In this document: piece by piece, positions 10,450 through 64,000 of the stretch
How positions within the stretch are numbered: the first letter of the stretch is position 1
Layout: each line of letters opens with the position of its first letter
Assembly: GCA_013265495.1 (NCBI GenBank)
Contig: MU057781.1
Span: forward strand, 1,240,001 to 1,304,000
Length of the DNA stretch: 64,000 nt
Reading direction: 5' to 3'
Origin: Vicugna vicugna
Taxonomy: Eukaryota
The notes under the pieces: generated by a model
What the model was told of the DNA's origin: nothing
Seen by the model: only the letters and a program-made list of their open reading frames with translations
Database searches by the model: none
Translations under genes and position numbers: made by a program

Positions 10450-10612
10450 NNNNNNNNNNNNNNNNNNNNNNNNNNNNNNNNNNNNNNNNNNNNNNNNNNN
10501 NNNNNNNNNNNNNNNNNNNNNNNNNNNNNNNNNNNNNNNNNNNNNNNNNNNNNNNNNNNNNNNNNNNNNNNNNNNNNNNNNNNNNNNNNNNNNNNNNNNN
10601 NNNNNNNNNNNN
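10450..10612. other. Assembly gap (163 N)
   Basis: Run of N. Confidence 1.
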
Positions 10613-13416: not shown

Positions 13417-14440
13417 TCTGTCTCTGTCTCCCTGTTTCTCTCTGTCTCCCTGTTTCTCTCTGTCTCTGTCTCCCCGTTTCTCTCTGTCTCCCTGTTTCTC
13501 TGTGTCCCTGTTTCTCTCTGTCTCTGTGTCCNNNNNNNNNNNNNNNNNNNNNNNNNNNNNNNNNNNNNNNNNNNNNNNNNNNNNNNNNNNNNNNNNNNNN
13601 NNNNNNNNNNNNNNNNNNNNNNNNNNNNNNNNNNNNNNNNNNNNNNNNNNNNNNNNNNNNNNNNNNNNNNNNNNNNNNNNNNNNNNNNNNNNNNNNNNNN
13701 NNNNNNNNNNNNNNNNNNNNNNNNNNNNNNNNNNNNNNNNNNNNNNNNNNNNNNNNNNNNNNNNNNNNNNNNNNNNNNNNNNNNNNNNNNNNNNNNNNNN
13801 NNNNNNNNNNNNNNNNNNNNNNNNNNNNNNNNNNNNNNNNNNNNNNNNNNNNNNNNNNNNNNNNNNNNNNNNNNNNNNNNNNNNNNNNNNNNNNNNNNNN
13901 NNNNNNNNNNNNNNNNNNNNNNNNNNNNNNNNNNNNNNNNNNNNNNNNNNNNNNNNNNNNNNNNNNNNNNNNNNNNNNNNNNNNNNNNNNNNNNNNNNNN
14001 NNNNNNNNNNNNNNNNNNNNNNNNNNNNNNNNNNNNNNNNNNNNNNNNNNNNNNNNNNNNNNNNNNNNNNNNNNNNNNNNNNNNNNNNNNNNNNNNNNNN
14101 NNNNNNNNNNNNNNNNNNNNNNNNNNNNNNNNNNNNNNNNNNNNNNNNNNNNNNNNNNNNNNNNNNNNNNNNNNNNNNNNNNNNNNNNNNNNNNNNNNNN
14201 NNNNNNNNNNNNNNNNNNNNNNNNNNNNNNNNNNNNNNNNNNNNNNNNNNNNNNNNNNNNNNNNNNNNNNNNNNNNNNNNNNNNNNNNNNNNNNNNNNNN
14301 NNNNNNNNNNNNNNNNNNNNNNNNNNNNNNNNNNNNNNNNNNNNNNNNNNNNNNNNNNNNNNNNNNNNNNNNNNNNNNNNNNNNNNNNNNNNNNNNNNNN
14401 NNNNNTGTCTCCCTGTTTCTCTCTGTCTGTCTCTGTGTCC
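13417..14440. repeat. Pyrimidine-rich minisatellite (~18-bp unit tctgtctccctgtttctc) whose centre is an 874-N gap (13532-14405)
   Basis: The same CT-rich unit flanks both sides of the gap, so the gap is probably unresolved repeat. Confidence 0.85.
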
Positions 14441-18771: not shown

Positions 18772-18795
18772 NNNNNNNNNNNNNNNNNNNNNNNC
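18772..18795. other. Assembly gap (24 N)
   Basis: Run of N. Confidence 1.
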
Positions 18796-57149: not shown

Positions 57150-60100
57150 AGGAGAGCAGCTTTAATTCTGCTCCATGAGCCGCGGATGCTAAGTACACGA
57201 TGGGTCGGGTACTGGGTGTCCAGCCTCTCGGGCCGAGCTGCACACAGCCTGGAGGCGCCACCTCCATCCGGCACAGACAGCTCCCACCTCAGGCTGTCAG
57301 ACTCCCCAGGAAACGGCCGGAAAGTGAGCTGCCCCGAGGATCCCTAAAGTGTCCATAGAGGGGGCGAGTCCAGCTTGAGACCCAGCAGCCCGCCGGAGGC
57401 TGTTCCCACCGCCACTGCTGCGTCTTCAGTGAGCTCCTGCACGGGGAGGTGGGGCCAGACATGCGTCCAGGGAAAGGAAGGAGTGCCCGCATCTCCCTGA
57501 GCTGACCCCCCATCCACCATCCAACCCTTGATCCCAGCATCGTCCCCTGGCCATTCCAGTCTTCACACGAGCAGCCTGCAGGTTCCCGAGGTCTAAAGGC
57601 GCAGAGAGAAACTGGCTCGTCTCCACACACGTGTCCTGGGCCTGGGGACCAGGACCTCCAGCCTCCAGCCTGGGTGGGGCAGCAGCTGGCTCTCTGCCCG
57701 AGGTTCCTGTTGGGACAAGGTGGGCCCATGCTGCAAGCCCCAGGCTGCCCCTGAGCGGCTGTCCCGGCCACACACAACCCCCAACACCCCAGCAGAAGCT
57801 GCCGGTCACCTCTGCCTCAGAAGTGACTTTCCATCAGAGGGAAGCCGCATAAAGTGCTGGGGGCTGCAGAGAGGAGGTCAGGGCTGCTGCCCTGATGGCC
57901 AAGCCCCGCCTGCGCTGGGAAGACCTCTGTGGCCGCGAGTCCTGAGCTCTGCATGTGCCAGAAACTAGCCTCTTCAGGAGGTAGGTGGAGACTCAGCGCA
58001 GCGAGGGACCGGGAGCCGCAGTCTGCTAGACACTTGTCTTACGGCTGTGAAATAAGTCAAGCCAAACACGTTTCAGGAGTGAGTTCTCGGTGCCAGTGGG
58101 AGGCCTGTGCTTCACGAATACCTTGTTCAGAAGGTGAGTCTTCAGTGTGCTAGTAGATTGTAAAGGGCGAGAGGTGCACTGAAGCTGTCTCCCGTGGTCA
58201 GCTGCAGATTCCAGAAAGCAGAGGCTCCATTTGCTGATGGACGACAGCTCGGGGCCCACGATGCTATTTCCACACGGGGCTCGAGGCAGAAGGCAGCCAG
58301 GGGCACACCTGGCCACAGCCACCTGAGGCCCAGCAACAAAGGGAGGGTGCAGTGTCCACGACACCCAGGACGCAACCCGGTCCACAGGGGTCCCTGTGGG
58401 CCCTCTGAGCTGCGGCTGTCACCGCAGGAGGCAGAAGGCCTGAGGCTCCCAGCAGCGCCAGCCTCTGAAGGCCCAGGGCGGCCTCGGTGGCCGCTTTCCC
58501 CAGCCTGGCTCTGCCGCTAACACGGGGGCCGGTGAAGCAGCTGACAGCTGCGGCCTCAGTCTCCCCACCTCGCAGGCGCAGCCCTGTGCTGAGTACAGAG
58601 CTCGACACTGTGGGGCAGCGTGAGGACCGCTGGGCCCACATCCCCTCCGCAGGCAGCTCAGAGGCCTGGGGGCGGGTCGTCCAAGCCCAAGGAGGGGCTG
58701 GCGGGGCAGCTGTGAGGAGGGCTGGGCACCCCGACCACTCACAAAGCCCGAGGCCCAGTTTCTCTTCCCGAGAGACGCCCCCCTACCCAAACTAACACTG
58801 GGATCCAGGGGGCCAGCTGCCCCCAGGTCCAGGCCCCCAAATGCAAGGTCAGGATGGTGGTAGTCAGACAGGCCTGTCTGCCTGAAGTCCCCTCTGGGGG
58901 ACCCCCGAAGCACACAGGCCCTCTGTGCACCCCACTCAGACCCCAGGGCCCCAAAACCCTCAAGGCCCCCCATGCATCCCCCTGGACCCCTGGTGAGTCT
59001 GGTCTTGGTGAGCCTTTGGGGCCTGTGGGCCGCAGCCCCGGGCCCACAGGGCAGCACTGGGGCCTGGGCGGGGGGTGCTCCTCCAGGCCACCCCTCCCTG
59101 TCTCTCTGCACCCGCACACACCTCCTGCAAGTTCTCCCAGAAGCCACCACTGGTCCCGGCCCCCACCTGCTCTGAGGCCAGGGCAGGTCACAGCCTCTAG
59201 GGGAGAGGGCGCAGGGTCAGACAGGAGACTGTGCACAGGGCAGAGGGACAGCCCCCGGCACGGCCTCTCCTCCGTGCCCTGCTGCTGCTGCGGTACAGGG
59301 CCCCGTGCCAGGCAGCTCACGCCCGTCTTTCTGTCATCTCCGGGCTGGGAGCCCCTGCCGGCAGCAAGGGGCTGCCCTGTGCTCACCTGTGCCCCTGCCC
59401 TGGAGTCTGCGAAGGGACCTGTAGGTGGGCACGGGTCCGTGGGGACCACCCAGCCTGGGGGAGTCTGAGCAGAATGCCCCCCAGGTCAGGGTGGGCCTTC
59501 CCAACTCCCCCAAACCCCACTTGCCCAGGACCACCCACTGGGCCCCCAGGGAGCTCCATGAGCCCTCCAGCCCCTGAGGGAGCAGTGCCAGGACTCCGGG
59601 GCCGGGCTTGGGGCGGGAGGGTCTCCACCCAGCCTTGATGCCCAGTCTCTGGGCAACTGGAAAGTCACTTCACCCCTTGGGGTTTCGTGTCCCTCGTCAG
59701 AAGTTCAGGACCCATCACAGCAGCCCACAGAAGGGCAACGGGAAAGTCAGGAGGGTCAGGGACATGGAGCGTCAGGAATACTGGGTGGGATGAGGGACAG
59801 GAGGGCTGGGAATGCCCCACCGAGAGGTCCCGCTGGCTGGGCCTTGGCCCCCTCCCCCCCCCACTGTGGGCCCTTCCCTCCACCTGCTGCCTCTTCTTGA
59901 CGCCCTGTCACTGGTCTCTGCCACCCAGGCTGGGGGCTGGGACCCTGAACCGGGCAGGGGTCTGCGGGGGCTCTTTCTGCATGGCTGAGGCCGTCCACAC
60001 TGGCAGGAGGACCCTGCTGACTCACGCTGGCACCGACCCGTGTGTTCACCTCGGTGTGGCCGTATTTGGATTTGAGAACATTTTAATACGAGGACTGTGA

Positions 60101-60299
60101 AAACGTCTCCAGAATCAATTTCCTTGTTCGTGTGTCTGTTGTCGGAGCCCTAGATGGACGGGATTTCCTCTGAGAGTGAAACAAAAACACCAGGCCTCCT
60201 CCTGCGTCCTCTCGGGGACGTGCTTTAATGTGAGGTGCCCGACTCTGCTGGAAGCAAAGGCAAAACCTTCGGTTGTCTCTTTAAATCGTCTCTGCATTG

Positions 60300-60530
60300 T
60301 GACGGGCGGCAGGCTGGCAGCGGGCTGGCTGGGACGAACCATTCCGGCCCTGCCGCAGGGAGCCGGCCACCGCGCCGCACCATCAGCGCCTCCCCCATCC
60401 CCATGGTTACGGCTCCTGCTTCCGACCATCCCTCGTCCCTGACCGTCGCCGCCCGCGGGAGCAGGCGCAGCGGCCGCTGGCAGTCCTCACGCAGAGTTCG
60501 GGAAGCTGCCTGCTGAGAATTGCACTGAAT
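60300..60530 (+). promoter_or_regulatory. CpG-dense putative promoter/TSS region upstream of the ADGRA1 5' exons
   Basis: Dense CpG (ccaccgcgccgcacc, cgtcgccgcccgcgggagcaggcgcagcggccgc) immediately 5' of the first relic exon. The TSS is not determined. Confidence 0.45.
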
Positions 60531-60570
60531 GTCGGCTGCTCCTGGCTCTGACTCATCCTCCGGGGTGCAG

Positions 60571-60744
60571 AGCCCCGGCCGGCGCTGGGCTGCGGTCCTG
60601 CAATCTGTTGATAACTCCACTTGCAGGCTCCAGAGCGCTGCCTCTGGGATGGAAAACTGCTCCCCAGACCCGAGAACTCACCGCGGCTCGCCGCCAACGG
60701 GAGGCACAGGACCGTGGCCACTCCAGCTGTTTTCACCAAAATAG
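60571..60744 (+). pseudogene. ADGRA1: Relic GAIN-domain exon of ADGRA1, frameshifted and probably 5' UTR; 5' boundary uncertain
   Basis: With a 1-nt deletion at ~60643 it reads VDNSTCRLQSAA/WDGKLLPRPENSPRLAANGRHRTVATPAVFTKI-G, versus recalled ADGRA3 TDDSLYKLQLIAFRNGKLFPATGNSTNLADDGKRRTVVTPVILTKID. Donor G|gtgaga at 60744/60745, phase 1. Confidence 0.8.
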
Positions 60745-61410
60745 GTGAGAAGTTGGGCTGTGCGTCTCCGGGGTTTGTGGCAGGTGGGCCCCAGTGAGGC
60801 AGCGACAGGGCCCGGGGAGGCAAGCTCGGAGCCCACTGGCCGTGGTGTCCACTCCCTGGCCGCTTCCTGGGCGCCAAGCCAGGGAGGCGATTCCTGCTGT
60901 TCCGAGTGCAGATTCTGGATAACTTTGGGTTCCACTGACGGCCCGGAGCCGCCAAAGGACTCAGTCTGTGGGGGGACACAGCCCCTGAGGTCCAGCCACG
61001 TCCAGGCAGCAGAGGCTTCCGTCCGCCCGGGCTGGCTGTTCCCTGGGAGATTAATTCAAGCTCTGTTGACTCCCTTGATTTAAACTGACAGGCAGGCCGT
61101 GCGTGTTTCTTGCAGCCCAAGACTGGGTTGAGTGTCTTGTGCTGGGATGGTGAGCAGAGGTGGGGTTTCAAACACGGGGAAGGAAGGGTCCCCGCGCAGC
61201 GTGTGGCTGTGGGCCAGGTCCCTCCGAGGCCCTGAGGCCCAGGTTGGCCCGGAACCTCTGCTGCCCAGACGGGCCCGAGACAGACACTCCAACAGGCTGG
61301 CTGGTGGAGAGGAGCCAAGGTGGGGGCCAACTTTGGGAGGTGCTGCCGGCCATGCTGGGGGTCCCCTGCGGAGGGGGACCCCCCCACCTGACCCTGCCCT
61401 GTCTTCGCAG

Positions 61411-61600
61411 ATGGGGGAGGCCTCTCCACCCTTGCCCGCCCCACCGCGGTCGCCAGGGGCTCGTCCCCGTGGCCGCTGTTCGGGACCTTGACCTTCCAGA
61501 CGGCCATGGAAGCTGGAGGGGAGAAGGGTGCAACATAATCGGCCGGGCAGGCAGCGCCACCTCCACCCCCTGCTCACACCTCAGTGACTTCTCTGTGCTC
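61411..61600 (+). pseudogene. ADGRA1: Relic GPS exon of ADGRA1 (5' UTR part), frameshifted
   Basis: Branch point ctgac at 61388, pyrimidine tract and cag acceptor at 61408-61410. 61454-61603 reads QGLVPVAAVRDLDLPDGHGSWRGEGCNIIGRAGSATSTPCSHLSDFSVLM, aligning without gaps to recalled ADGRA3 HGADAVAARWDFDLLNGQGGWKSDGCHILYSDENITTIQCYSLSNYAVLM (20/50 identical). The 5' part is in another frame (GGGLSTLARPTAVA). Confidence 0.88.
61506..61538 (+). other. uORF MEAGGEKGAT* in strong Kozak context (gccATGg) within the relic GPS exon
   Basis: atg gaa gct gga ggg gag aag ggt gca aca taa, out of frame with the ATG at 61601. Confidence 0.6.
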
Positions 61601-61603
61601 ATG
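61601..61603 (+). CDS. ADGRA1: Start codon of adhesion G protein-coupled receptor A1 (GPR123); only the ATG is coding in this exon and the rest of the CDS lies beyond the window
   Basis: ctcATG|gtgagt consensus donor directly after the GPS Met. Recalled human ADGRA1 starts MDLKTVL..., which aligns to ADGRA3 AVLM-DLTGS... No DLKTV-like exon was found in 61604-64000, so assignment to ADGRA1 is an inference. Confidence 0.75.
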
Positions 61604-64000
61604 GTGAGTACGTGCGGGGCCGCCCACCCCCGCACGGGCCCCGGGCAGGAGCAGGAACTGCCCCGTGCCAGGCTGCGGGCAGGGGCCGGGGCTCCAGGCT
61701 GCCCTCGCCCAGTGGACCTTCTGCTGGCTGCTCACAGACCATACTAATGAGGTGCCGGCAGGCTGCAGCGTTGACTCACTGGCTTCACGGGAGACGGCGT
61801 CCTGCCCCCACCCCAGGCTGTGACCTGTGAAAGCTTCCTCCGGCCCCGGGCTGGGCGCCTCCCACTCCGGCCCCTAGGCTCCACACGCGGCTGCCCACCG
61901 CAGCCCTGCCGGCCCCTTCCCCCAAAAAGTTGGCTGAACTGATGGCAGGGGATGTGGGTGGGCTTCCGCTGCAGGGACACCGAGCTTGGAGGTCGGGTCT
62001 CTCTCCAGAGAAGGGGGTGCGGCCACCGTGAGCAGCGGGGGGGGCTCGTCCTGAAGGCAGGGGCACTTCCTGTGCTGCCCCCCCGCTTGGATTCCGGAAA
62101 GGCTGACGCCTGTAAATAATGCATTGTGTGTATGCGTGTGTGTGTGAGGGACAGCGGCCAGCGCGTGCGGGGAATGCCGATGGCCGGAGGACAGGGAGGC
62201 CAAGGTGGCCGAGGCTCGGACAACGACGGCGAGTCGCTAGGGCAGATGCGACTCCCCACAAGGAGGGGTTCTGAGTCACCGGTGCATCTTCTTGTTCAAT
62301 TTGAAATGTCAAAACAAGGGAGAAGCTTTTAGCCAGAGGTCAGCGCTGCCCGCAGAGCTGCCCCCCGGCCCGCAGGCTGGGGGCCGGCGCCAGCCTCTCA
62401 GAGGCCTGAGGGTCACGTTCCAGGCACAGCCCAGCTGCACCTCCAGCTCGGTGACCCGAGCCAGCCACCTGTTGCCCCCAGCACGTCCAGGCCTCTGGGG
62501 CAGCCGTGTCCGAGGTTCTGTATCCTCACATTTGGATCCTCGTTTGCAAAATGGGTCCTTGTCACTGGCAGATGAAGGGTGAGCCAGAGGTCAGGGCAGG
62601 GGGCCAGCACGGCCCCTCGGGCCCTGCGCATGTGCGCTGTCCTCCCCAGCATCAGCCCCGTCTCCACCTCCTGTCTGACCCTTTGGCCCTCCCGTGAGAA
62701 CCGCCGGGCGGCCCCGGTTGGGGGCCCTCCTCCTCGAGTCCGTCCCACCCTCTCCCCACCCCGGCCCCCAGCCCACTCCACGCAGGCCCGTCAAGACTGC
62801 GGGAATCAGCTGGGCTACCCTCGCCCGGAGAGTTTGGAATCTCAGCTGTGCGCTGAGCTTTTATTCCTGACAAGTAACACTTACGCTGGAGAGGCTTTCC
62901 GGAAGGACAGAGAATGCCCAGCCTGGCATGTGGGCTGCAGCTCGGCTGCAAGCACTTTCCTGAGCGCGTCTGAGAGTCTGAGGTGTAGACACCTGGGCGG
63001 CTGCCCGTGGCCCTGGGGCACGAGGGGAGGAGAACCAGCAGGGCTGGCTCTGGCCTTGCCACACTCCCACCACCCGCTTGGCCCTGGTGGTGAGCTGCCC
63101 CAACCCCTGTGGTCGGACAAGGCGCCTCCGGCCCCCAGTTGTAAAGACGCCGTGGTCGCCAGCAGGTACGACCAAAGCTGAAACCACGCTGCTCTCTGGG
63201 CGATTTCCTGTGGGACTGCTGGTGCCCCACGCACCTTCTGAACACGCCGCCTGCGTGCCCTCGGCGCCCGCAGGATGGTGAGTTCCCGGCGCCGCCCCGG
63301 GGGGCTGGGGGGCTGCAGCCCCATCTCCAGCGGGTAGATCCCAGGCCTCACACCCCCGCCCACCCGCCCAGCACTGACCACAGCTGCTGTCAGGGGCTGA
63401 CCTGCACGGCTGTTCCCGCGATGGTGCTGCCAGCTGTCAAGTTCAAGCAGGTTCCAAAATGCAAGCGGCTTTGCGCCCCATAGTCTTCTGTGATCCTCAC
63501 TGTCAGCTCAGGGCACAGTGCTCTTCAAGGGAACAAAGTGGCAGGCTCTGGAGTCGGAGGGAAACCCGTCCAAACCCGTGTGCTGTTTCCCTGAGTCGGT
63601 GGTGCCACCACACCTGTCTCGGGAAAGAGGGTGAGCCCACCCGCTCACTCATGCTGGGGCCTCAGTGGCACCATGGCCTCGCTGGTGGCTTTGCTCCGTG
63701 TGGCCCAGGCCCAGGAGGCATGGCCTGACCTCGGTGTGTCAGGGCATCCTTCGCCAGGTCCTGCAGGGCCCGGAACCAGGACAGGGCGCGAGGCCAGGCC
63801 TGCCCCAAAGACAGACATGCACGCTCAGGACGCCGCTGCTCTGCACGGAAGCACCCACGTTCAAAAGGCAAGAGTGGAGTTGAAACCCCGGAGAGACCAG
63901 GGAGGTTGCAGGGCAGAGACTGGAGGCCGGGGCTGTGGGTGGTCTGGGAGGGAGGGAGCCCGCAGGGCGTCGGGGCTCTGTCTGAGCCAGCGGGACCCCA

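What the first reader, a model, noticed from the sequence alone, without database searches (positions are those of the whole stretch)
60571..61609. Fossil GAIN/GPS ectodomain exons recycled as the spliced 5' UTR of ADGRA1
Seen in sequence: two exons with intact splice signals whose junction rebuilds the paralog phase exactly (...ACC AAA ATA G|AT GGG = T-K-I-D-G). They translate to ADGRA-family GAIN and GPS sequence. The first has a 1-nt deletion at ~60643. The second is 193 nt versus ~209 nt expected from the recalled ADGRA3 protein, consistent with a ~16-nt frameshifting deletion near 61454. Established: mammalian ADGRA1 is the adhesion GPCR lacking a GAIN/GPS ectodomain. Inference: the ectodomain was lost by partial pseudogenisation, with the last two exons kept as non-coding leader. 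I cannot tell whether this has already been described.
Basis: partly seen in the sequence, partly recalled or inferred. Interest (0 to 1): 0.85.

Follow-up and report, generated by a model that had tools for sequence, protein, structure and literature searches.

The report
Fossil GPS exons lead ADGRA1 mRNA
The last two exons that once encoded the outer (GAIN/GPS) domain of the brain receptor ADGRA1 survive here as frameshifted relics that are still transcribed and spliced as the mRNA's leader, and the last codon of the relic is now the start codon, which shows how the only adhesion GPCR without that domain lost it.

Summary

**Homology.** Windows 60589-60744 and 61411-61603 are homologous to the last two ectodomain exons of intact ADGRA1 from frog, bird, fish and platypus:
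- tblastn E 4e-10 and 2e-7
- Pfam GPS 28.7 bits, above the 22.5-bit cutoff
- placement inside the ADGRA1 clade with 92/94 support

**Lesions.** There is a 1-nt deletion at 60645/46. That 1-nt loss sits at the same codon in cat and whales.

**Transcription.** RNA contigs from five runs splice 60744|61411. One joins the terminal ATG (61601-03) to GATCTGAGG... = M-DLRAVLSLP, the ADGRA1 TM1 exon. That exon lies about 7 kb downstream in whale and cat.

- The AG at 60570 is neither ancestral nor used. The ancestral acceptor (about 60526-27) is mutated, and the RNA exon runs back to at least 60198 from a CpG-rich former intron.
- Exon 2 ends in the start codon, so it is not pure UTR.
- No other ectodomain exon is detectable in the 60 kb upstream.
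- The RefSeq platypus ADGRA1 model keeps these two exons intact (plus Ig, GPS and 7TM hits), so the loss is therian or later, not pan-mammalian.

I found no paper describing this.

The parts
60000..60600 (+). CpG-rich zone, the likely promoter of the present-day transcript, lying in what was the intron upstream of the penultimate ectodomain exon
   Evidence: CpG observed/expected is 0.75-0.83 here, against 0.17-0.39 from 59000 to 59999. RNA contigs begin at 60198, 60411, 60412, 60432, 60458 and 60472. 60198-60526 is the best conserved part: 85% identity to both whale and cat. The TSS itself is not mapped.
60198..60527 (+). 5' part of the first exon as seen in RNA (former intron sequence). It contains upstream ATGs at 60228 and 60403.
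   Evidence: The X6 contig runs 60198-60742 continuously, and other contigs start at 60411-60472. The uATGs are listed.
60525..60527 (+). Relic of the ancestral 3' splice site: bird CAG|AAC aligns with CTG|AAT here, so the AG is lost
   Evidence: DNA alignment of bird, whale, L001 and cat. Homology in 60528-60588 is weak, so this placement is tentative.
60528..60744 (+). Fossil exon A, the penultimate ectodomain exon (end of the GAIN domain). Frame 1 reads ...AAVLQSVDNSTCRLQ, then frame 3 reads DGKLLPRPENSPRLAANGRHRTVATPAVFTKI.
   Evidence: tblastn with Xenopus ADGRA1 residues 616-627 and 633-664. HMM hit at 2e-7. The bird exon is 208 nt. 86.7% identity to whale over 60589-60744, against 74% in the intron.
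60569..60570 (+). It lies inside the ancestral exon and is not used in any RNA contig seen.
   Evidence: Contigs X1, X4, X5, X6, X10 and X12 all run straight through it. See also the alignment.
60645..60646 (+). 1-nt deletion (frameshift) in fossil exon A
   Evidence: Bird TTTCGGAATGG against window CTCT-GGGATGG. The gap is the same in whale and L001. The cat has a 16-nt deletion spanning this site.
60529..60744 (+). Longest upstream ORF of the leader (71 codons). It starts at ATG 60529 and ends at the TAG 60742-60744 that closes exon 1.
   Evidence: In felids the same ATG is in frame with the main ORF and is used as the annotated start.
60745..61410 (+). Intron of 666 nt, GT..AG, removed in RNA
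   Evidence: The joint 60744|61411 appears in runs X1, X4, X5, X6 and X10. Both splice sites are conserved from bird to mammals.
61411..61603 (+). Fossil exon B, the GPS exon (193 nt; 209 nt when intact). Frame 3 reads DGGGLSTLARPTAVARG, then frame 2 reads LVPVAAVRDLDLPDGHGSWRGEGCNIIGRAGSATSTPCSHLSDFSVLM.
   Evidence: E 4e-10; Pfam GPS 28.7 bits; 6e-11. 83.4% identity to whale with no gaps.
61451..61452 (+). Site of a 15-nt in-frame deletion (removes about GLRHF). It is shared with whale and L001, while the cat lacks only 3 nt here.
61460..61461 (+). 1-nt deletion in the Val codon of R-G-V-D-P. This is the frameshift of exon B and is shared by the window, two whales and the cat.
   Evidence: Bird GGT GTA GAC CCC aligns with window GGC -TC GTC CCC, whale GGC -TC GAC CCC and cat GGC -TG GAC CCC.
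61601..61603 (+). ATG: the Met of the family-wide ...VLM that ends the GPS exon, now the start codon of ADGRA1
   Evidence: The X4 contig reads ...CTCATG|GATCTGAGGGCCGTCCTCTCCCTGCCC = M-DLRAVLSLP. The ATG|GTRAGT is conserved in bird, cat and whales. No other in-frame ATG exists in the leader.
61604..64000 (+). Start of the long intron to the TM1 exon, which lies beyond the window
   Evidence: No DLK../YPGEF exon is in the window. In whale the TM1 exon is 7.6 kb past the GPS exon and in cat 7.1 kb. Low-depth unspliced contigs cover 61575-62292.

Best explanation
These are the last two ectodomain-coding exons of ADGRA1 (the end of the GAIN domain and the GPS motif). They have decayed into non-coding sequence but are kept in the mature mRNA as its 5' leader.

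Shown:
- Ancestral ADGRA1 was a full LRR-Ig-GAIN/GPS-7TM receptor, as it still is in frog. Long ADGRA1-type models with both of these exons intact also exist in platypus, birds, reptiles and fishes.
- In this lineage the reading frame is broken by 1-nt deletions in both exons.
- No upstream ectodomain exon is recognisable any more.
- The transcript runs from at or before 60198 through fossil exon A. It splices 60744|61411 to fossil exon B, then splices from 61603 to the TM1 exon.
- The only in-frame ATG is the final codon of exon B. This is the conserved Met of ...VLM, at position +7 counting from the residue after the HL of the old GPS motif. The protein therefore begins M-DLRAVLSLP....

Inferred:
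- A promoter in the former intron (CpG-rich and 85% conserved to cat) now drives the gene. This makes the short 'CTF-like' form the only product.
- The three splice sites and the ATG survive because the mRNA still needs them. The coding content drifted.
- The 1-nt deletion at 61460/61 is shared with cat and whales, and the platypus is intact. This places the loss after the monotreme split and before the carnivore-cetartiodactyl split.
- The leader carries six upstream ATGs and probably damps translation. This is untested.
For: - Homology and frames.
- Orthology to ADGRA1 rather than ADGRA3: identity is 46-56% against 36-41%, and the relic falls in the ADGRA1 clade at 92/94 with a branch of 0.69 against 0.10-0.15.
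- Intact ADGRA1 joins ...NFAVLM directly to DLK(T/K)VLS(L/F)[12 protein letters not shown].
- Splicing: 60744|61411 in five runs, and 61603|GATCTGAGG... = DLRAVLSLP in X4 at the same depth as the exon contig.
- Synteny: whale and cat have fossil exon A, fossil exon B and then the ADGRA1 TM1 exon 7.1-7.6 kb downstream on the same strand.
- Lesions and their sharing.
- No coding constraint: substitutions show no third-position excess in exon B. By my own count, 5 of 7 differences from the RNA-source species fall on codon position 1 (position lists).
- Platypus long form with both exons intact.
- Promoter-like zone.
Against: - The TM1 exon is outside the window. The link rests on one 56-nt contig junction plus cross-species synteny and gene models.
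- The RNA comes from a close relative (0-3.6% divergent), not provably from the same species, and the tissues are unknown.
- Contig ends are not mapped transcription starts.
- A second product is seen in X5 and X6, where 61603 is spliced to another exway-type exon (AGTTTATCGCCC...). Not all transcripts therefore encode the receptor from this ATG.
- The ATG context is weak (C at -3) and six uATGs precede it. Use of this start is not shown at protein level.
- ADGRA2 was not sampled with a named full-length sequence in the tree.
- No marsupial, primate, rodent, afrotherian or xenarthran DNA was examined.
Confidence: 0.87

Rival explanations
1. The exons are still protein-coding here. Either the frameshifts are assembly errors, or the frame that ends in VLM is translated as an N-terminal extension of ADGRA1, as felid RefSeq models annotate it.
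For: - That frame is open for 164 codons upstream of the ATG in the mature leader.
- Indels between the window and the whales in exon A sum to 6 nt.
- Felid models (P0186, P0032) start at an ATG in fossil exon A and read both exons into the 7TM.
Against: - The frameshifts are present without gaps in RNA contigs of six runs, and whales have the same exon-B length.
- There is no in-frame ATG upstream in this species. The felid ATG (60529) is out of frame here and absent in whales.
- Most of the open frame is not the ancestral frame.
- There is no third-position excess.
- An open frame of this length arises in about 6.5% of composition-matched random sequences.
- The extension would have no signal peptide and no upstream GAIN.
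Confidence: 0.04
2. The relic exons mainly belong to a separate non-coding transcript (promoter-associated or lncRNA) that shares a start with ADGRA1, and they are not the functional leader of the receptor mRNA.
For: - In X5 and X6 the contig continues from 61603 into another exon (AGTTTATCGCCC...). That exon is not the TM1 exon and would break the M-DLR... frame.
- Its ortholog lies about 2.7 kb past the GPS exon in L001.
- The whale model P0001 also ends in a non-receptor exon.
Against: - In X4 the junction to DLRAVLSLP has depth 34.6, equal to that of the exon A-B contig at 35.1.
- Gene models in cat and lynx join exon B to TM1.
- The ATG and its donor are conserved from bird to mammals.
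- Both products can coexist.
Confidence: 0.07
3. It is a detached pseudogene fragment (for example a copied piece of ADGRA3 or ADGRA2) that only happens to lie near ADGRA1.
For: None beyond the general similarity among family A members.
Against: - The relic is closest to ADGRA1 orthologs in identity and in the tree.
- The intron is retained at the orthologous place with conserved splice sites, so it is not a retrocopy.
- It is collinear with the ADGRA1 TM1 exon in whale and cat.
- It is spliced to TM1 in RNA.
Confidence: 0.01

Closest known systems
ADGRA1 / GPR123, the one adhesion GPCR described as lacking a GAIN domain
   Same: This is that gene's 5' end. The encoded N-terminus M-DLRAVLSLP... 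matches mouse ...[18 protein letters not shown] (PMC13178472) and the TM1 exons of whale and cat.
   Different: Papers held in the library state only that the domain is absent, or 'likely lost ... over evolution' (PMC13178472, PMC12059339, PMC12922695, PMC2386866). None describes relic GAIN/GPS exons in the leader, the start codon being the Met of ...VLM, or an intact long form in platypus. Lagerstrom et al. 2007 (J Neurochem) could not be read.
Full-length ADGRA1 of non-therian vertebrates (e.g. Xenopus tropicalis, 1305 aa; Ornithorhynchus model, 1142 aa)
   Same: The two exons, the phase-1 junction (..KI|DG) and the boundary ...VLM|DLK... are the same. Identity to the relic is 53-55%.
   Different: Those proteins keep an open frame through these two exons. 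Xenopus has LRR, Ig, GPS and 7TM domains. The platypus model's precomputed Pfam hits show an Ig domain, PF26588, GPS and 7TM but no LRR. Here the frame is broken and everything upstream is gone.
CTF-like, N-terminally truncated adhesion-GPCR isoforms made from internal transcription starts (Kuhn et al. 2024, PMC11039983)
   Same: Transcription starts inside the GAIN-coding part of the gene, and the ORF begins at the GPS/7TM boundary.
   Different: In other adhesion GPCRs this is an alternative isoform beside the full-length one. Here it is the only form left, and the skipped coding exons have decayed or vanished.
Pseudogenic exons embedded in 5' non-coding exons (Morais & Harrison 2009, PMC2718932)
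   Same: A frameshifted former coding exon is transcribed as part of a 5' non-coding exon of a live gene.
   Different: Their set was built from duplicated exons with an intact parent exon in the same gene. Here the original, single-copy exons decayed, taking a whole domain architecture with them.

Membership tests
ADGRA1 (GPR123) locus, ortholog of vertebrate ADGRA1 | Sequence of the two exons is closer to ADGRA1 orthologs than to paralogs | tested here: met
   46-56% identity to ADGRA1-type sequences against 36-41% to ADGRA3. The relic falls inside the ADGRA1 clade at 92/94. ADGRA2 was represented only by unnamed exon fragments at 44-46% identity.
ADGRA1 (GPR123) locus, ortholog of vertebrate ADGRA1 | Same transcription unit as the ADGRA1 7TM exons | tested here: met
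   RNA junction 61603|GATCTGAGGGCCGTCCTCTCCCTGCCC = DLRAVLSLP. The TM1 exon lies 7.1-7.6 kb downstream in cat and whale. The TM1 exon itself is outside the window.
ADGRA1 (GPR123) locus, ortholog of vertebrate ADGRA1 | Conserved exon-intron structure (phase-1 junction KI|DG; GPS exon ending ...VLM|) | tested here: met
   Splice sites aligned from bird to mammals.
Functional GAIN/GPS autoproteolytic domain | Match to the GPS motif profile | tested here: met
   PF01825 scored 28.7 bits against a 22.5-bit cutoff on 61454-61603. All 13 PDB hits are GPS motifs.
Functional GAIN/GPS autoproteolytic domain | Continuous open reading frame through the domain, with an upstream GAIN subdomain and a signal peptide | tested here: not met
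   There are frameshifts at 60645/46 and 61460/61 and a 15-nt loss. No other ectodomain exon is found in 60 kb.
Functional GAIN/GPS autoproteolytic domain | Retained HL|S/T cleavage site | tested here: not met
   The letters HL|S are present, but whale, bird and platypus have HF|S or HF|G, frog has RL|G and fish have HH|N. The window's L is one T>C change from F. It is a chance match in untranslated sequence.
CTF-like isoform from an internal promoter (adhesion GPCRs) | Transcription start inside the ectodomain-coding part of the gene | tested here: inconclusive
   RNA contigs begin at 60198-60472, in a CpG-rich conserved zone upstream of fossil exon A. Contig ends are not mapped starts, and no CAGE or 5'RACE data are available.
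CTF-like isoform from an internal promoter (adhesion GPCRs) | Coexists with a full-length isoform of the same gene | tested here: not met
   No upstream coding exons remain.
Pseudogenic exons in 5' non-coding exons (Morais & Harrison) | Exon disabled by frameshift or stop, and transcribed in a non-coding exon | tested here: met
Pseudogenic exons in 5' non-coding exons (Morais & Harrison) | Derived from a duplicated exon whose parent is intact in the gene | tested here: not met
   There is a single copy. The family HMM finds only these two hits in the window.

The most novel reading that the evidence does not exclude
The relic is not just tolerated but maintained. The fossil exons would be kept as a uORF-laden control leader. 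Alternatively their shifted but open frame would be translated where an in-frame start exists (as annotated in felids), giving an ADGRA1 with a relic GPS/Stachel stub. In that case the short form would have predated and permitted the decay of the ectodomain. Points in favour: exon B has no indel between this species and whales, the exons are 9-17 points more conserved than the introns, and the frame is open for 164 codons. Points against: there is no codon-position signal, exon B diverges at a neutral-looking rate from the closest species, and the open frame has P about 0.065.
Probability: 0.1. Interest if true: 0.7.

Novelty: new member of a known kind. Interest (0 to 1): 0.55.

Why it matters
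ADGRA1 is the single exception to the rule that adhesion GPCRs carry a GAIN domain. Recent functional papers can only say that the domain was 'likely lost'.

The relic exons turn that into a concrete, datable history:
- The long form is still present in the platypus model.
- A frameshift is shared by carnivores and cetartiodactyls.
- Transcription now starts in a former intron.
- The start codon is the conserved Met that ends the old GPS exon (...VLM), at position +7 counting from the residue after the HL of the old GPS motif.

This explains why the protein begins where it does. It gives a natural 'CTF-only' receptor to compare with engineered truncations. It flags felid RefSeq proteins whose 133-residue extension is probably an annotation artefact. 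It also points to a uATG-rich leader that expression constructs usually omit. This is a tidy evolutionary explanation, not a new kind of system.

Tried and rejected
- **TM1 exon in the window.** I searched all six frames for DLKT, YPGEF and similar motifs and found nothing. It lies beyond the window end.
- **Alternative exon in the window.** The 30-mer that follows 61603 in X5 has no match in the window. Its ortholog in L001 places it about 135 nt past the end.
- **More fossil exons upstream.** I ran tblastn with eight ADGRA proteins and an HMM of 12 family members against all stop-to-stop fragments. Only the two exons scored. A weak collinear hit at 57896-58150 scored -0.6 bits and is noise.
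- **Coding constraint in the open frame.** I found none in exon B, and the open frame is compatible with chance.
- **A mouse or fish-type alternative first exon (M-x-x-W|GT)** between the GPS and TM1 exons in the window, whale, cat, bird and L001. None was found with that pattern.
- **A joint 60551>61684 with 15 foreign letters** in X1-X3. I rejected it as 18-21-nt chance matches of other transcripts.
- **A first Pfam call** failed on a frame with stops and was redone with clean pieces.
- **Lynx protein P0032** is not on record for DNA, so I used the Geoffroy's cat locus instead.
- **Literature.** Seven full-text searches found no description of the relic exons. Lagerstrom 2007 is not held.
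Full report
**What is in the sequence.**
The first ends ...ACC AAA ATA G|GTGAGAAG at 60744. The second runs from CTTCGCAG|ATGGGG at 61411 to GTGCTCATG|GTGAGTAC at 61603 and is 193 nt long. No single frame reads through in the ancestral sense:
- Exon A reads AAVLQSVDNSTCRLQ in frame 1, then DGKLLPRPENSPRLAANGRHRTVATPAVFTKI in frame 3.
- Across the junction the sequence reads D-G.
- Exon B reads GGGLSTLARPTAVARG in frame 3, then LVPVAAVRDLDLPDGHGSWRGEGCNIIGRAGSATSTPCSHLSDFSVLM in frame 2.

**Is it more than chance?**
- A phmmer search of the exon-B frame against PDB returned 13 hits. All were adhesion-GPCR GPS motifs and all ended at the exon's last residue (best E 1.4e-4).
- Pfam GPS scores 28.7 bits on 61454-61603, above the curated cutoff of 22.5.
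- The same 64 residues searched against 1.84 billion representative proteins gave 43 hits at E<1e-3.
- The intact ones are ORFs over the GPS exon, or spliced models, from fishes and a bird. Several are named ADGRA1/GPR123.
- The key ones read ...ALQSVDNSTCKLQFIVFRNGKLFPCTGNSSNLADDGKRRSVSTPVAFTKL|DGCSLGS...[70 protein letters not shown]... (Lates japonicus ADGRA1). That is an intact GAIN end and GPS fused to the ADGRA1 first transmembrane helix.
- tblastn of Xenopus ADGRA1 (1305 aa; LRR, Ig, GPS, 7tm_2) hits the window only at residues 616-627, 633-664 and 685-734. The hits are in frames 1, 3 and 2, in that order (E 2e-7 and 4e-10).

**Which gene?**
- Over 109 comparable positions the relic is 46-56% identical to ADGRA1-type sequences. 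It is 36-41% identical to ADGRA3 and 32-36% to invertebrate deuterostome (hemichordate and sea-star) outgroups.
- In a maximum-likelihood tree it sits inside the ADGRA1 clade (92/94) with the tetrapod members. Its terminal branch is 0.69, against 0.10-0.15 for intact orthologs, as expected for released constraint.
- ADGRA2 was represented only by unnamed fragments, which is a gap.
- Synteny closes that gap. In gray whale (L002) and Geoffroy's cat (L003) the same two relic exons are followed, 7.6 and 7.1 kb downstream on the same strand, by the exon DL(R/K)[28 protein letters not shown] and then further ADGRA1 7TM exons.

**Lesions.**
I aligned the window's DNA with whale, a second cetartiodactyl-like contig (L001), cat, a bird with intact exons (L004) and an intact exon B of unknown origin (L005).
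- Exon A has a 1-nt deletion at 60645/46, shared with whale and L001. The cat has a 16-nt deletion there.
- Exon B is 209 nt in the bird, 202 nt in the cat and 193 nt in the window, whale and L001.
One is a 15-nt in-frame loss at 61451/52 (the cat lacks only 3 nt there). The other is a 1-nt loss at 61460/61, in the Val codon of R-G-V-D-P.
- The 1-nt loss is at the identical position in the cat, both whales and the window. It therefore predates the carnivore-cetartiodactyl split.
- These lesions are not assembly errors. RNA contigs from six runs cover exon B and most of exon A (from at least 60472) without a gap.

**Transcription and splicing.**
RNA-seq contigs of a close relative (0-1 mismatches in exon A, 7 in exon B) were laid on the window.
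- The joint 60744|61411 (GT..AG, 666 nt skipped) is present in X1, X4, X5, X6 and X10.
- In X4 a contig of the same depth (34.6 against 35.1) continues from ...CTCATG into GATCTGAGGGCCGTCCTCTCCCTGCCC. This reads M-DLRAVLSLP, the ADGRA1 N-terminus.
- In X5 and X6 the donor at 61603 is instead joined to another exon (AGTTTATCGCCC...). Its ortholog in L001 would lie about 135 nt past the window's end. At least two products therefore exist.
- In every contig the first exon runs straight through the AG at 60570 and back to 60411-60472. In X6 it runs back to 60198.
- The ancestral acceptor (bird CAG|AAC) aligns with CTG|AAT at 60525-27|60528 and is lost. This placement is tentative, because homology in 60528-60588 is weak.
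- The segment 60000-60600 has CpG o/e of 0.75-0.83, against 0.17-0.39 further upstream.
- 60198-60526 is the best conserved piece, at 85% identity to both whale and cat. The introns are 63-74% identical.
- I read this segment as the present promoter and first-exon region, born in the former intron. This is an inference.

**Coding or not?**
- The frame that ends in the ATG is open for 164 codons but holds no other ATG.
- Six upstream ATGs open short ORFs. The longest has 71 codons, running from 60529 to the TAG that closes exon A.
- Felid RefSeq proteins (P0186, P0032) start at the ortholog of that ATG and read both relics in the shifted frame into the 7TM. In this species that ATG is out of frame, and in whales it is absent.
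- Substitutions between the window and whales, cat or bird show no third-position excess in exon B.
- By my own count, 5 of the 7 differences from the RNA-source species fall on codon position 1 of the ATG frame (position lists).
- An open frame this long arises in 6.5% of composition-matched random sequences.
- I conclude the relics are non-coding apart from the final ATG.
- They are moderately conserved: exon B is 83% identical to whale with zero indels, and exon A is 87%. This could reflect splicing, promoter proximity or leader function. At the shortest distance exon B diverges about as fast as the introns.

**How much of the ectodomain is left, and when was it lost?**
- Neither tblastn with eight family members nor a family HMM against all six-frame fragments finds any other piece in the 60.5 kb upstream.
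- A search with the two-exon-plus-TM1 region of Xenopus ADGRA1 listed long ADGRA1-type proteins in amphibians, turtles, squamates, crocodilians, birds, sharks and ray-finned fishes. It also listed Ornithorhynchus anatinus ADGRA1 (1142 aa; Ig, GPS, 7tm_2).
- In the platypus sequence both exons are intact and followed by [21 protein letters not shown]. No therian long form appeared among the 120 best hits.
- The loss is therefore therian or later, not 'mammalian'. It is at least as old as the ancestor of carnivores and cetartiodactyls.

**A side point on the sister note s1-262534.**
- Translation from the last residue of ...VLM is supported by the X4 junction.
- The 'retained canonical HL|S' is not. 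Whale, bird and platypus have HF, frog has RL and fishes have HH at that spot. The window's CTC is one transition from TTC.

**Literature.**
Seven searches and ten papers were checked.
- The vertebrate aGPCR survey PMC8584163 lists ADGRA1 only in tables.
- Internal starts giving CTF-like isoforms are described for many aGPCR genes (PMC11039983).
- Pseudogenic exons inside 5' non-coding exons are described as rare cases (PMC2718932).
- I found no description of these relic exons. Lagerstrom et al. 2007 could not be read, and database gene models already show long non-mammalian ADGRA1. I therefore rate this a new, well-documented case of known processes.

Noticed in passing
beyond window end (about 64135 by homology); L001:9261-9275; L002:25624-25785: The donor at 61603 is also spliced to a non-receptor exon (AGTTTATCGCCCACCCGATGCC...) in runs X5 and X6. 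The whale gene model P0001 ends in yet another exon between the GPS and TM1 exons. These may be alternative or non-coding ADGRA1 5' isoforms.
   Followed up: partly
L003:3001-4029 (Geoffroy's cat); proteins P0186, P0032, P0187: Felid RefSeq/UniProt ADGRA1 proteins (692-699 aa) carry a 133-residue N-terminal extension that is the two relic exons read in a shifted frame from an ATG in fossil exon A. This is probably a longest-ORF annotation artefact.
   Followed up: partly
proteins P0098, P0102, P0185, P0213, P0216 and most teleost hits: Many non-mammalian proteins named 'ADGRA3' or 'ADGRA3-like' carry the ADGRA1-type flank ...VLMDLK(K/T)VLSFP.YPGE(F/Y)LHPVVY, and the ones I included in the tree (P0098, P0102, P0185) group with ADGRA1. 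The names look systematically wrong.
   Followed up: partly
protein P0048 (Notothenia GPR123) against mouse ADGRA1 in PMC13178472: The fish short model starts MDKW|[8 protein letters not shown] and the mouse protein starts MTQW|[8 protein letters not shown]. This hints at an old alternative first exon for a short isoform. A strict pattern search between the GPS and TM1 exons of the window, whale, cat, bird and L001 found none.
   Followed up: partly
window 61574-61603: The relic reads CSHL|SDFSVLM, a textbook GPS cleavage motif, but intact ADGRA1 orthologs lack HL (HF, RL, HH). ADGRA1's GPS may have been non-cleavable even when functional.
   Followed up: partly
window 60443-61603 (mature leader): The frame of the start codon is stop-free for 164 codons, and window-whale indels in exon A sum to a multiple of three. 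The simulation gives P about 0.065, and there is no codon-position signal.
   Followed up: yes
window 61411-61603 against 60412-60744: Against the RNA-source species, exon B has 7 differences in 193 nt, like the introns. The first exon has 0-1 differences in about 270-330 nt from 60411 on, though the X6 contig shows 9 over 60198-60742, most of them upstream of 60430. Constraint seems to sit on the first exon downstream of about 60430 rather than on the GPS relic.
   Followed up: no
window 10450-10612, 13532-14405, 18772-18794: Three runs of N (1060 bases in all).
   Followed up: no
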